The notes under the pieces are model-generated. The model saw nothing but the letters and a program-made list of their open reading frames with translations. It had not been told where the DNA came from and did no database searches. A stretch of 63,850 bases of DNA, counting the filler, from Sluysia triapertura (Eukaryota): NCBI GenBank assembly GCA_046118255.1. It is 5 parts of 5 records of this genome, joined end to end, with 100 filler letters (N's around TTAATTAATTAA, not from the genome) between each part and the next. Parts side by side here need not be neighbours in the genome. Positions count along the whole stretch, not along the records: positions 1 to 13,030 come from JBJNIA010064745.1; 4 more parts are not named here. One strand, written 5' to 3'. Positions 11,402-13,030 of the stretch are shown one piece after another; the first letter of the stretch is position 1, and each line of letters starts with the position of its first letter. The position numbers and the translations under genes were made by a program.

Positions 11402-12370
11402 TCATGTCTGGCACGTTATGACTGTCTGTGTTAGATTCTCCATTAATAATAAATACAAATATAAAAGATCAATAATTGGTAGGTAAATATTTAAAATTAC
11501 TTCGACTAAACTATTTAGGCAACCATCGGATTTAATATTGCTCGTAATACCAACATCTAATTGATCAATACAGAATCTGTGGTCAGATGTGTAATTTTGT
11601 AGAGATACAAGTAAATCTTTCAAACGATTGAAATGCTCGTAAAAGAATTGATTTGTTGATCCAAGATTAATCACTTCGAAGGTGTCTTGGAAATAGGGAC
11701 AATGTACGCCAAATTTTAGACATAAGCCGGCTTCATTTAACTGATATGGACATTGAAACGTTATTTTTTGATCCAAAGATTTCCACTTAAATTAAATTAA
11801 CATTATTGTTGGTAGTTTTTATATAACCAGAGATATATCCACATGTATAGATTTTATTGAATTTTTGATATGGATCAGGTTCGGTTTTATATTTTTCATG
11901 AAATACATTTGGCCTGTTGTAATGGACTCCAAAACAGCTGTTTCAGTTGATAAACACAAAATTTCTTTTACTTCTCAAATGATTTTATCAGACACGTCAT
12001 TAGCATGCCGTAAAATTGTTCAAGAACATGTAAACTTTTATAATCCGATCTAAGGTCACGAAACCGTTGATAAACACCATCAACTTTATCTATAAGAATT
12101 CGACTTAATCAATCATCGGTGCATGTATTCGAGAGTACTTTCATAAAATTTTTTCTCCTTGCAGTTTTTTCTGAAATAGCCAAGATAAACTTATATTGTA
12201 GTTGTTCAATTGAGTTTGTTTGTAAGGCTTTATAAACTTCAGTTAGACTTTTTGTTGCACGATTTGAGTCTAGAACTATGCACGTGATCTCAGAATTTTT
12301 TGAATAACGTATTTGATCTTGTACTAATGGTTTGAGTGATAATAATACAATGTAACTTTTCCTTGATAAG
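11402..12370 (-). pseudogene. Degenerate RecQ-helicase-derived segment followed by an Unkempt-like CCCH zinc finger (copy A)
   Basis: Minus strand reads PLVQDQIR, KFILAISEK, LSRILIDKVDGVYQRFRDLRSDYKSL (RecQ [26 protein letters not shown]) and NRPNVFHEKYKTEP, then ORF 11402..11776 QCPYQLNEAGLCLKFGVHCPYFQDTFE. Confidence 0.7.
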
Positions 12371-12781
12371 GCTTATCTTTAATACGAAGAAGCTTTAACT
12401 TATCATTATTAATAATTTCAATATGATTTTTACTGTTAACAATTAGATCTTGCAGCATTTTGACTTCATTGTGGTATTTACTAATACTTTGTTGATTATT
12501 CACTTACGAATTGAGTTATTATGTAATTAAAGACACTTGTTTTTCTTCACTTTTGTTCTCGATTCTTTTACCAACTGTTCGTTCAATTTCTATTTTATAA
12601 TACTTCCAATTTTGTTTAGTTGGTTTTTCACTATTAATTTTTGTTCGCTTGTCCAGTTAAAATCAAAAAATTTTTTATTGTTATTCCTGCGAATCTGTGT
12701 TTATGCAACAAGATAGGTATGTTGTAAATAATTAGAATTAGTTGGACGTCCAATCAGGTTTACCAAATATGATCTGAATAG

Positions 12782-12854
12782 TATCTGTCATCGGTAGACA
12801 GCAAACATGAAATATCGAATTGGCTTTGATTGATCTGTCTACCGATGACAGATA
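12782..12854. repeat. Perfect 20-bp inverted repeat with 33-nt spacer (hairpin A)
   Basis: TATCTGTCATCGGTAGACAG (12782-12801) and its exact reverse complement (12835-12854). Confidence 0.95.
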
Positions 12855-12920
12855 ATGAATGAAGTTTGGTTGTTAGGCCAGCTAAAAATACTGGTGACGA
12901 AATTAAAATAAATAATTGCA

Positions 12921-12958
12921 TAATAATAATAATACTAATAGTAAAACGAATTAATTAG

Positions 12959-13030
<72 letters not shown>
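12921..13030 (+). repeat. (AAT)n microsatellite at contig end
   Basis: Read directly. Confidence 0.95.

What the first reader, a model, noticed from the sequence alone, without database searches (positions are those of the whole stretch)
11402..13030. Repeated module: microsatellite, conserved hairpin, dead RecQ helicase segment, Unkempt-like CCCH finger (copy A)
Seen on the minus strand, in order: a TTA-repeat tract, a perfect 20-bp inverted repeat with a 33-nt spacer, an intronless RecQ-derived first RecA domain with DEAH changed to DKVD, then NRPN running straight into FHEKYKTEP, and a QCPY...C.K.GVHCPY finger. The same order recurs on another contig (24555-26139). I know of no RecQ-CCCH fusion family. 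Inference: either a lineage-specific amplified chimeric gene family or a mobile element that captured host RecQ and unkempt fragments, with the hairpin as its terminus, origin or promoter.
Basis: partly seen in the sequence, partly recalled or inferred. Interest (0 to 1): 0.78.

Follow-up and report, generated by a model that had tools for sequence, protein, structure and literature searches.

The report
Decayed RecQ–zinc-finger pseudogene in a repeat
This stretch is one worn-out copy of a DNA repeat present a few dozen times in an AT-rich, probably arthropod, genome, and it carries a broken fusion of half a RecQ helicase domain and one unkempt-type zinc finger; this is ordinary genomic debris of a familiar kind, not a new working gene.

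Summary
The sequence features are real. There is an (ATA)n tract at 12920-13030. A perfect 20-bp inverted repeat has arms at 12782-12801 and 12835-12854 with a 33-nt loop (fold z = -7.2). On the minus strand lies a RecQ-derived segment. NCBIfam recQ_fam is its top hit (E 1.8e-4), and my own RecQ HMM gives 27.6-32.1 bits (E 2e-8 to 1e-9 within the window).

The RecQ part covers only motif Ia to the F-D/N-R-P-N motif. It has no Walker A and no second RecA domain. DEAH reads DKVD. It is broken by one in-frame TGA and at least two frameshifts.

"NRPN...FHEKYK" is RecQ's own continuation, not a fusion joint.

The finger has unkempt ZnF3 spacing (C-x9-C-x6-C-x3), but the final His is Gln. Its support is below threshold (Pfam 22.1 bits against a cut-off of 31.1; PDB 5ELH E 1.2).

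Contigs of the one public run that holds this DNA show that 11231-12913 is repeated. About 11-26 contigs cover the coding part and about 47 cover the hairpin.

My best reading is a decayed copy of a lineage-specific interspersed repeat that carries passenger gene fragments. The way it moves is unresolved, because the piece ends inside the microsatellite. No relatives were found in the protein databases. Interest is low to moderate.

The parts
12920..13030 (.). (ATA)n/(TTA)n microsatellite, perfect from 12955. It runs into the edge of the piece, so its true length and what lies beyond are unknown.
   Evidence: TRF: period 3, 36 copies, 88% matches; sequence read
12855..12919 (-). AT-rich spacer between microsatellite and hairpin; part of the repeated unit
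   Evidence: A contig of run X1 spans 12649-12913 with 19 differences (table 8)
12782..12854 (.). Hairpin: perfect 20-bp inverted repeat (12782-12801 / 12835-12854) with a 33-nt loop. It is the most abundant part of the module (about 47 contigs).
   Evidence: contig counts at 12816 and 12828
12504..12781 (-). A-rich non-coding leader between hairpin and coding part. Coverage by other copies is low at 12708 (4 contigs, depth 54).
   Evidence: No family hit for any frame; table 3
12327..12503 (-). Stop-free 59-codon piece upstream of the RecQ part, where motifs 0/I would be expected. No detectable RecQ similarity.
   Evidence: Adding it to the read-through does not raise the RecQ HMM score above shuffled controls; no Pfam/NCBIfam hit
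12112..12372 (-). RecQ-derived piece B (87 codons): motif Ia/Ib region (..IVLLSLKPLVQDQ..)
   Evidence: TIGR00614 recQ_fam E 1.8e-4; own RecQ HMM E 7e-4, positions 53-122; tblastn with E. coli RecQ
12109..12111 (-). In-frame TGA stop between pieces B and C. Nearly all other copies read CGA (Arg) here.
   Evidence: table 3 (12111 A>G on the + strand, depth 381 of 406, 12 contigs); codon effect computed
11971..12108 (-). RecQ-derived piece C (46 codons): motif II region. DEAH is replaced by DKVD (12079-12090). RecQ-specific [11 protein letters not shown] is degenerated to YQRFRDLRSDY.
   Evidence: HMM alignment of the X-joined read-through, 27.6 bits, E 2.4e-8
11936..11974 (-). Frame-shifted piece (EVKEILCLSTETA) that bridges C to the NRPN piece and corresponds to the post-motif-III stretch of RecQ
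   Evidence: Including it with X at the shifts lengthens the HMM alignment to position 204; 2 of 300 shuffles do as well
11790..11933 (-). Third frame: FGVHYNRPNVFHEKYKTEP.. . NRPN (11907-11918) aligns to RecQ's F-D-R-x-N at the end of RecA domain 1. RecQ similarity fades after about 11880.
   Evidence: the spacing from DKVD to NRPN is 58 codons, against 60 from DEAH to FDRPN in E. coli RecQ (invariant columns)
11405..11791 (-). 129-codon open frame. It has one unkempt-type CCCH-like finger at 11687-11752 (C-x9-C-x6-C-x3-Q; the last ligand His is Gln), then about 95 codons with no known similarity.
   Evidence: Pfam zf-CCCH_UNK E 1.4e-4, 22.1 bits, below the cut-off; 5ELH unkempt ZnF3 is the only PDB hit, E 1.2; no other relatives
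11231..11404 (-). AT-rich 3' flank with several AATAAA motifs. It is repeated at lower copy number (about 4 contigs at 11406). The outer boundary of the repeat lies somewhere in 11200-11460.
   Evidence: Depth bins and table 3; a unique contig covers 10702-11194 with 0 differences (table 8)

Best explanation
Window 11231-13030 (minus strand) is one decayed copy of a lineage-specific interspersed repeat. The repeat is present in roughly 25-35 copy equivalents at 80% identity or more.

Its inner part is a dead chimeric reading frame. The first component is a fragment of a RecQ-family helicase, running from motif Ia to the F-D/N-R-P-N motif at the end of RecA domain 1. It has no Walker A, DEAH has become DKVD, and there is no second RecA domain or RQC. 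It is followed, after a frameshift near 11790-11800, by a single unkempt-type CCCH finger whose last ligand is lost, and then by a tail with no known similarity.

No protein made from this could unwind DNA. I read the coding part as passenger material: host gene fragments picked up or fused once and then copied along with the repeat.

The hairpin plus microsatellite segment is 2-4 times more abundant than the passenger part. I infer that it is the cis-acting end through which an autonomous element encoded elsewhere copies the unit.

I split the mechanism as follows, all of it inference:
- About 35%: a non-LTR-retrotransposon-dependent unit read on the + strand, with a 3' stem-loop and an (ATA)n tail, copy number rising toward that end, and the passenger antisense.
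- About 25%: a non-autonomous DNA or rolling-circle element read on the minus strand, with the hairpin and microsatellite near its 5' end.
- The remainder: segmental or gene-family duplication.

Shown: the features, the RecQ homology, the breaks, and the repetition. Inferred: passenger status, the hairpin's role, and the mode of mobilisation.
For: RecQ homology and its extent. Absence of motif I. The RecQ HMM alignment stops at position about 207 even with the tail attached. Breaks: stop-free pieces in three frames. The TGA is CGA in nearly all other copies.

CCCH.

Repetition: summed contig depth is 430-600 over 11431-12430 and 940 over 12631-12830. Single-copy contigs next door have depth 12-21. 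There are 11-26 contigs in the coding part and 46-47 at the hairpin loop. Listed contigs differ from this copy at 7-17% of aligned positions.

The inverted repeat is internal to a larger repeat, not the TIR pair of a 73-bp MITE: 16 contigs cover 12741 and one contig spans 12649-12913.

No close relatives among proteins. This fits a young, lineage-restricted non-gene.

Precedents for gene-fragment cargo, 5' inverted repeats and microsatellites in insect non-autonomous Helitrons: PMC4344730.
Against: No element boundaries, TSDs, TIRs or Helitron termini could be demonstrated. The best outer inverted match (11278-11297 / 12900-12919) is 17 of 20 in AT-rich DNA, one of 29 such pairs in a 2-kb AT-rich stretch.

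Coverage dips to about 4 contigs at 12708. The hairpin repeat and the coding repeat may therefore be two separate families that are adjacent in only a few copies.

The four best-supported differences from other copies inside the RecQ part are all synonymous, and the stop is a sense codon elsewhere. This hints that the source was a coding sequence under constraint, not mere cargo. The sample is tiny and was picked by the tool's ranking.

Open-frame length alone is weak evidence: a 129-codon run arises in 2-9% of simulated 13-kb sequences.

Contig depth is not a copy count.
Confidence: 0.55

Rival explanations
1. This is a remnant of an autonomous DNA transposon that natively encodes a RecQ-type helicase, as KolobokH or AcademH do. 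The copy would be an internally deleted, decayed derivative, with the hairpin region as its terminal sequence.
For: RecQ helicases are documented accessory proteins of Kolobok lineages (PMC9587614). Helicase-encoding AcademH occurs in animals and fungi. The module is repeated and its end region is more abundant than its interior.
Against: No transposase-like frame was found anywhere in 11000-13030. The RecQ part is only a fragment of domain 1, with degenerate motifs that look family-wide. DKVD needs three nucleotide changes from DEAH, and this site is not among the 40 differences shown, although 344 more are not shown. No TIR or TSD was shown. The 87-residue RecQ piece finds no TE-borne or other relative in 1.84 billion proteins.
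Confidence: 0.1
2. This is a chimeric retrocopy. A read-through or template-switched transcript joined a RecQ gene and an unkempt-like gene, was reverse-transcribed into an intronless chimera, and was then multiplied by duplication or by riding on a neighbouring repeat.
For: Both parts are contiguous coding fragments on the same strand, and the HMM does not favour an intron: the 34-nt GT..AG option gives no gain. AATAAA motifs and an A-rich stretch follow the frame at 11285-11370. In Heliconius, Unkempt and an 1896-bp RecQ helicase gene lie about 13 kb apart in one locus (PMC2816678, PMC3001726). Co-transcription of such neighbours is therefore conceivable, but this is a lead only; the organism here is unknown.
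Against: The repeated unit also includes more than 450 nt of non-coding upstream sequence with the hairpin and microsatellite. A simple retrocopy would not carry that. No poly(A) tail or TSD can be recognised. Gene adjacency in this genome is untested.
Confidence: 0.12
3. This is a real lineage-specific gene family encoding a 'dead-helicase plus CCCH' protein, of which this locus is a recently broken member.
For: The TGA is CGA in nearly all other copies, and 4 of 4 well-supported differences in the RecQ part are synonymous. The 129-codon frame is longer than in 91-98% of simulations.
Against: In the finger/tail frame 8 of 10 differences are non-synonymous, which looks neutral. At least two frameshifts as well as the stop are needed to read this copy. 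The catalytic motifs and the last zinc ligand are lost. No protein relative exists in any database searched. No RNA run holds the sequence, though that is not evidence of silence.
Confidence: 0.1
4. The hairpin/microsatellite segment and the RecQ-CCCH segment are two unrelated repeats that happen to adjoin here, and at the reader's second locus through a local duplication.
For: Coverage is about 47 contigs at the hairpin and 11-26 in the coding part, but only 4 contigs (depth 54) at 12708 between them.
Against: The dip coincides with low-complexity A/T runs (12655-12685), where short assembly contigs tend to break. One contig runs from 12913 through the hairpin to 12649.
Confidence: 0.12

Closest known systems
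RecQ-family DNA helicases (NCBIfam TIGR00614; E. coli RecQ)
   Same: Colinear similarity runs from motif Ia (SPL..L..DQ) through the motif II neighbourhood (DEAHC.[9 protein letters not shown].Y) to the F-D/N-R-P-N motif. The DExH-to-FDRPN spacing matches: 58 codons against 60.
   Different: No Walker A. DEAH is DKVD. There is no second RecA domain, zinc-binding/RQC or HRDC. The frame is broken by a stop and frameshifts. The score is 20 bits against a family cut-off of 220. This is a fragment and a pseudogene, not a member. The RecQ subfamily could not be determined because no eukaryotic sequences were available to the tools.
Unkempt CCCH zinc fingers (Pfam PF25427; mouse Unkempt ZnF3, PDB 5ELH)
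   Same: Gapless match with identical C-x9-C-x6-C-x3 spacing and the G.HC core.
   Different: Only one finger, where unkempt has two clusters of three. The terminal His is Gln. Scores are below threshold. The flanking sequence shows no unkempt similarity.
Gene-fragment-carrying non-autonomous elements (insect Helitron/Hel-2-type elements, Pack-type transposons)
   Same: A moderately repeated unit that combines non-coding structured ends (an inverted repeat and a variable microsatellite) with fragments of unrelated host genes on one strand (PMC4344730).
   Different: No 5'-TC or 3'-CTRR, and no hairpin a few bases from an end, on either strand within the piece. The hairpin has a 33-nt loop and lies more than 60 nt from the edge of the repeated region. 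One end of the unit lies beyond the piece.
Helicase-encoding DNA transposons KolobokH, Kolobok-1_CCri and AcademH
   Same: RecQ/SF2-type helicase sequence inside a repeated element (PMC9587614, PMC10045372, PMC10799480).
   Different: Those encode an intact helicase together with a DDE transposase, and have TIRs and defined TSDs. None of this is seen here.
Non-LTR retrotransposon 3' ends with a stem-loop and simple-repeat tail, and composite elements that they mobilise (own knowledge: I factor (TAA)n tails, stringent-type LINE 3' stem-loops, SVA-like composites)
   Same: On the + strand the repeat ends with a stem-loop, about 65-100 nt of spacer, and (ATA)n. The 3'-proximal part is the most abundant.
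   Different: No reverse-transcriptase partner with this tail was identified. The coding fragments would be antisense. The depth profile is not monotonic. The tail end and TSD lie outside the piece.

Membership tests
RecQ-family helicase | Significant, colinear similarity to a RecQ-specific profile | tested here: met
   TIGR00614 is the top hit, E 1.8e-4. Own HMM gives 27.6-32.1 bits, E 2e-8 to 1e-9 with Z=408. This shows homology of a fragment only; the curated whole-protein cut-off (219.8 bits) is far from met.
RecQ-family helicase | Walker A / motif I (GxGKS/T) and motif 0 | tested here: not met
   The upstream piece 12327-12503 adds nothing to the HMM score compared with 20 shuffles.
RecQ-family helicase | DEAH box (motif II) | tested here: not met
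   The aligned residues are DKVD at 12079-12090.
RecQ-family helicase | Second RecA domain (Helicase_C) and RecQ C-terminal zinc/winged-helix region | tested here: not met
   The HMM alignment ends at position 204-207 of 348 even with the downstream frame attached. There is no Pfam or NCBIfam helicase hit downstream. The full-length RecQ HMM scores -3.4 on the 129-codon frame.
RecQ-family helicase | Uninterrupted reading frame | tested here: not met
   TGA at 12109-12111 and frame changes near 11971 and 11933.
Unkempt-type CCCH zinc finger (PF25427) | Pfam gathering score | tested here: not met
   22.1 bits against 31.1, E 1.4e-4.
Unkempt-type CCCH zinc finger (PF25427) | Three Cys and one His with unkempt ZnF3 spacing | tested here: not met
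   C-x9-C-x6-C-x3 is present and aligns gaplessly to 5ELH residues 100-121, but the fourth ligand is Gln.
Helitron/Helentron (non-autonomous) | 5'-TC and 3'-CTRR ends, with a short hairpin a few bases before the 3' end, inserted at A|T or T|T | tested here: not met
   I read the sequence on both strands. There is no CTRR within about 25 nt after the hairpin, and the repeated region continues at least 59 nt beyond it to 12913. No hairpin plus CTRR is seen at the other boundary, 11230-11460. One end may lie beyond 13030, so this is not a full test.
TIR DNA transposon / MITE | Terminal inverted repeats at the two ends of the repeated unit, flanked by a target-site duplication | tested here: inconclusive
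   The best outer pair, 11278-11297 / 12900-12919, is 17 of 20 and AT-rich, and its flanks TTA/ATA are not identical. The 20-bp perfect repeat is internal to a larger repeat.
KolobokH / AcademH | DDE transposase encoded with an intact helicase | tested here: not met
   No transposase-like hit in any stop-free piece of 11000-13030. Sequence beyond 13030 is not available.
Non-LTR-dependent retroelement / processed pseudogene | 3' simple-repeat or poly(A) tail at the element's end, a TSD, and 5'-truncated copies | tested here: inconclusive
   The (ATA)n tail lies at the + strand end of the repeated region, and abundance is higher near it. But the tail runs off the piece, no TSD is visible, and depth is not monotonic. 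There is no poly(A) at the minus-strand 3' side.

The most novel reading that the evidence does not exclude
This is an undescribed non-autonomous mobile element family of an arthropod. It fused fragments of a RecQ1-type helicase gene and of unkempt into one frame, and that frame was still coding when it spread. Two observations point this way: the stop is a sense codon in other copies, and the best-supported differences in the RecQ part are all synonymous. RecQ and unkempt are near neighbours in Heliconius. The product would be a TE-borne or domesticated 'inactive helicase plus RNA-binding finger' protein, with the conserved hairpin as the element's recognition site.
Probability: 0.12. Interest if true: 0.55.

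Novelty: new member of a known kind. Interest (0 to 1): 0.28.

Why it matters
As it stands, the finding matters mainly for annotation. These loci should be masked or labelled as a repeat-borne pseudogene, so that they are not predicted as RecQ or zinc-finger genes.

If the family's ends were defined, it would be one more documented case of host gene fragments being fused and multiplied by a mobile element in an arthropod-like genome. It would also give a handle on which autonomous element recognises the hairpin and microsatellite end.

Only if intact, expressed copies exist would it bear on how new chimeric proteins arise.

Tried and rejected
1. Single pieces against Pfam and the PDB gave no DEAD or RecQ hit. 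Homology only appeared with RecQ-specific profiles.

2. An exhaustive phmmer search of the 87-residue RecQ piece against 1.84 billion representatives gave 0 hits at E <= 1e-3. A word-index search of the 129-residue frame gave none. The Atlas gave none. An exact look-up of the neighbouring 231-aa ORF found nothing on record.

3. The hairpin arm in metagenome contigs gave 5 single-arm chance matches in DNA of 38-42% GC, none with a second arm. The whole hairpin pattern in viral contigs gave none.

4. Rfam found nothing in the module, and no tRNA was found.

5. A 34-nt GT..AG intron (11938-11971) would restore the frame between piece C and the NRPN piece. I rejected it as the better model because it adds nothing to the RecQ HMM score, while the frameshift path adds 4.3 bits.

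6. Pairwise Smith-Waterman of the NRPN piece and the bridging piece against individual RecQ sequences was no better than shuffles. Only the colinear HMM extension is supportive.

7. Open-frame length as evidence of coding is weak.

8. The narrow enterobacterial RecQ HMM ranked the right pieces first but with marginal E-values.

10. Kojima's AcademH paper is not held in the library.

11. I did not send an X-joined read-through to Pfam, PDB or the fold tools. It has no reference and would have had to be typed, so it was used only inside scripts.

12. The RecQ subfamily (RecQ1, BLM, TE-borne) was not assigned because no eukaryotic RecQ sequences could be obtained through the tools. My impression that it resembles RECQL1 rests on memory only.
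Full report
WHAT IS THERE

The piece (1-13030) is AT-rich eukaryotic DNA, 17-33% GC in 500-nt windows.
- TRF finds (ATA)n at 12920-13030. It is perfect from 12955 and runs into the edge of the piece.
- A perfect 20-bp inverted repeat has arms at 12782-12801 and 12835-12854 with 33 nt between them. It folds far better than shuffles: -21 against -6.5 +/- 2.0 kcal/mol, z = -7.2.
- Downstream lie stop-free pieces in three different frames: 12372-12112 (87 codons), 12108-11971 (46), 11942-11790 (51) and 11791-11405 (129).

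IS THE RECQ CLAIM REAL?

Single pieces gave nothing in Pfam or the PDB. An exhaustive phmmer search of the 87-residue piece against 1.84 billion representative proteins gave no hit at E <= 1e-3. RecQ-specific profiles do see it.
- NCBIfam TIGR00614 (recQ_fam) is the top hit of the 87-residue piece: E 1.8e-4, residues 6-82 on profile positions 53-124 of 470.
- E. coli RecQ by tblastn has its best hit in the whole window exactly here. RecQ residues 69-175 align to 12351-12001, E 0.024, running through the in-frame TGA.
- I built an HMM from 19 diverse RecQ-like genes of IMG/VR contigs plus 4 enterobacterial RecQ. Of all 408 six-frame stop-free pieces of the window, the 87- and 46-codon pieces rank first and second (E 7e-4 and 0.036), colinearly.
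- Joined with X at the stop (inside the script only), they score 27.6 bits, E 2.4e-8, over HMM positions 52-158. 'TLViSPLiaLmkDQv' aligns to 'YIVLLSLKPLVQDQI'. '[19 protein letters not shown]' aligns to 'LIDKVDGVYQRFRDLRSDY'.

The RecQ homology is therefore real, and DEAH is indeed DKVD (12079-12090).

HOW FAR DOES IT REACH?

- Downstream: adding the frame-shifted pieces 11974-11936 and 11933-11790 with X at the shifts extends the alignment to HMM position 204. 'issfdReNlsle' aligns to 'FGVHYNRPNVFHE'. The score rises to 32.1 bits, and only 2 of 300 shuffles of the added part reach that.
- Spacing: from DKVD to NRPN is 58 codons. From DEAH to FDRPN in E. coli RecQ it is 60.
- Intron alternative: a 34-nt GT..AG (11938-11971) would also restore the frame, but it gives no gain in score. 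I prefer frameshifts.
- Upstream: the piece where motifs 0 and I should lie (12503-12327) adds nothing beyond shuffled controls.
- Further downstream: nothing corresponds to the second RecA domain.

The RecQ part is thus a fragment (HMM 52 to about 207 of a 348-position helicase core). It lacks the Walker A, has a destroyed motif II, and is broken by one stop and at least two frameshifts.

THE FINGER

The 129-codon frame begins at a further frame change (about 11791). It contains QCPYQLNEAGLCLKFGVHCPYFQ at 11687-11752.
- Pfam's only hit is zf-CCCH_UNK: E 1.4e-4, but 22.1 bits against a gathering score of 31.1.
- A 32-residue query has a single PDB hit at E <= 10. It is mouse unkempt 5ELH, third finger, gapless, with identical C-x9-C-x6-C-x3 spacing, E 1.2.
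- The fourth ligand, His, is Gln here.
- The remaining 95 or so codons match nothing.

The unkempt-like reading is plausible but sub-threshold, and the two tests are not independent.

REPETITION

One public run (X1, coded organism A, 2024, no RNA run) holds 44% of the sampled words. Its contigs match the neighbouring unique DNA exactly (9742-11194, 0 differences, depth 12-21), so it is the same organism.

| Region or site | Summed depth | Contigs |
|---|---|---|
| 11431-12430 (coding part) | 430-600 | 8-26 at the listed variant sites (mostly 10-19) |
| Hairpin loop (12816, 12828) | about 1,550-1,590 | 46-47 |
| 12708 | 54 | 4 |
| 11406 | about 100 | 4 |

The listed contigs differ from this copy at 7-17% of aligned positions. 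The module therefore belongs to a family of a few dozen diverged copies. The hairpin segment is 2-4 times more abundant than the coding part, and the outer boundary on the low-coordinate side lies between about 11200 and 11460.

The inverted repeat is internal to a larger repeat: one contig spans 12649-12913 and 16 contigs cover 12741. It is therefore not the TIR pair of a 73-bp MITE.

Where this copy has TGA (12109-12111), nearly all others read CGA. The four other best-supported differences in the RecQ part are synonymous, while 8 of 10 in the finger/tail frame are not. This is a small sample picked by the tool's ranking. It suggests at most that the RecQ part was once under coding constraint.

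Frame length alone is weak evidence. A 129-codon run arises in 2-9% of simulated 13-kb sequences.

WHAT IT MOST LIKELY IS

It is a decayed copy of a lineage-specific interspersed repeat whose interior is a dead chimera of a RecQ fragment and an unkempt-type finger. The fragment could never have been a helicase in this form. DKVD needs three nucleotide changes from DEAH, and that site is not among the 40 differences shown, although 344 more are not shown. The degeneration therefore probably predates the amplification.

I read the coding part as passenger. I read the more abundant hairpin/microsatellite segment as the cis-acting end used by an autonomous element elsewhere.

Two orientations fit.
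- On the + strand the unit ends with a stem-loop, a spacer and (ATA)n, like the 3' end of many non-LTR retrotransposons (own knowledge). Abundance rises toward that end, as with 5' truncation.
- On the minus strand the order is microsatellite, inverted repeat, then cargo. This recalls insect non-autonomous Helitrons, which carry 5' inverted repeats, a variable microsatellite and acquired host sequence (PMC4344730).

Neither could be proven.
- No CTRR end lies near the hairpin, and no TSD is visible.
- The only outer inverted match (11278-11297 / 12900-12919, 17 of 20) is weak.
- The piece ends inside the microsatellite.
- The low coverage at 12708 leaves open that two separate repeats merely adjoin here.

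COMPARISON WITH WHAT IS KNOWN

RecQ helicases do occur as accessory genes of DNA transposons. KolobokH and Kolobok-1_CCri are described in PMC9587614, and helicase-encoding AcademH in PMC10045372 and PMC10799480. Those elements encode intact helicases next to a transposase, which is not seen here.

A literature search for RecQ together with unkempt turned up only the Heliconius colour-pattern locus. There, Unkempt and an 1896-bp RecQ helicase gene lie about 13 kb apart (PMC2816678, PMC3001726). The RecQ gene is described as translocated relative to Bombyx (PMC2515155). This is a lead for a co-capture or read-through origin, nothing more, because the organism here is unknown. The only taxonomic hint is a CRAL_TRIO_N/Pinta-like exon at 7501-7782, which suggests an arthropod-like host.

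VERDICT

It is wrong about the joint and unproven about the hairpin. This is a new member of a known kind of thing, a repeat-borne gene-fragment pseudogene. Interest is low to moderate. It would rise only if intact expressed copies or a defined new element type were found.

Noticed in passing
window 9231-9830: Very high-copy repeat. Summed contig depth is 8,000-15,000, with 35-110 contigs at the listed variant sites in run X1 and many internal deletion joints. It is far more abundant than the RecQ module. No family was assigned; there is only a sub-threshold Rfam JPX_2 hit at 9422-9490 (E 0.42).
   Followed up: no
window 8431-9057: Moderately repeated region (depth 360-2,100; 18-32 contigs). 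It includes three tandem 22-nt-spaced units at 8977-9057.
   Followed up: no
window 7501-7782 (+): 94-codon open frame starting with ATG. The protein atlas places it with CRAL_TRIO_N / Pinta-like UBA (alpha-tocopherol-transfer-protein-like) clusters at 0.95. Pfam itself gave no hit at E <= 0.1. It is probably the first exon of a host SEC14-like gene, and it hints at an arthropod-like host.
   Followed up: partly
window 6428-7123 (+): The longest open frame of the piece (231 aa). It has a hydrophobic N-terminus and a hydrophobic stretch near the C-terminus. There is no Pfam family (only a chance-level Vpu hit), and no exact record in the gene-position index.
   Followed up: partly
window 404-679 (+): Stop-free piece ending ..FVVGALGSWDPENDILLIKL.. 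. From memory it resembles the conserved C-terminal tail of some non-LTR retrotransposon ORF2 proteins. No Pfam hit; not tested further.
   Followed up: no
window 1209-1259 and 2158-2208; also 264-313 and 2065-2114: Repeated segments (78-88% identity). The first pair contains a tRNA B-box-like GGTTCGATTCC, yet ARAGORN finds no tRNA. These may be copies of a tRNA-derived SINE.
   Followed up: no
window 1782-1926 and 5716-5879: Two copies of a repeat of about 150 nt in opposite orientation (82-90% complementary in three blocks), 3.8 kb apart.
   Followed up: no
window 11938-11971 (minus strand): A 34-nt GT..AG interval would exactly restore the frame between the DKVD piece and the NRPN piece. 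The RecQ HMM does not favour splicing it out, so I treat it as coincidence.
   Followed up: yes
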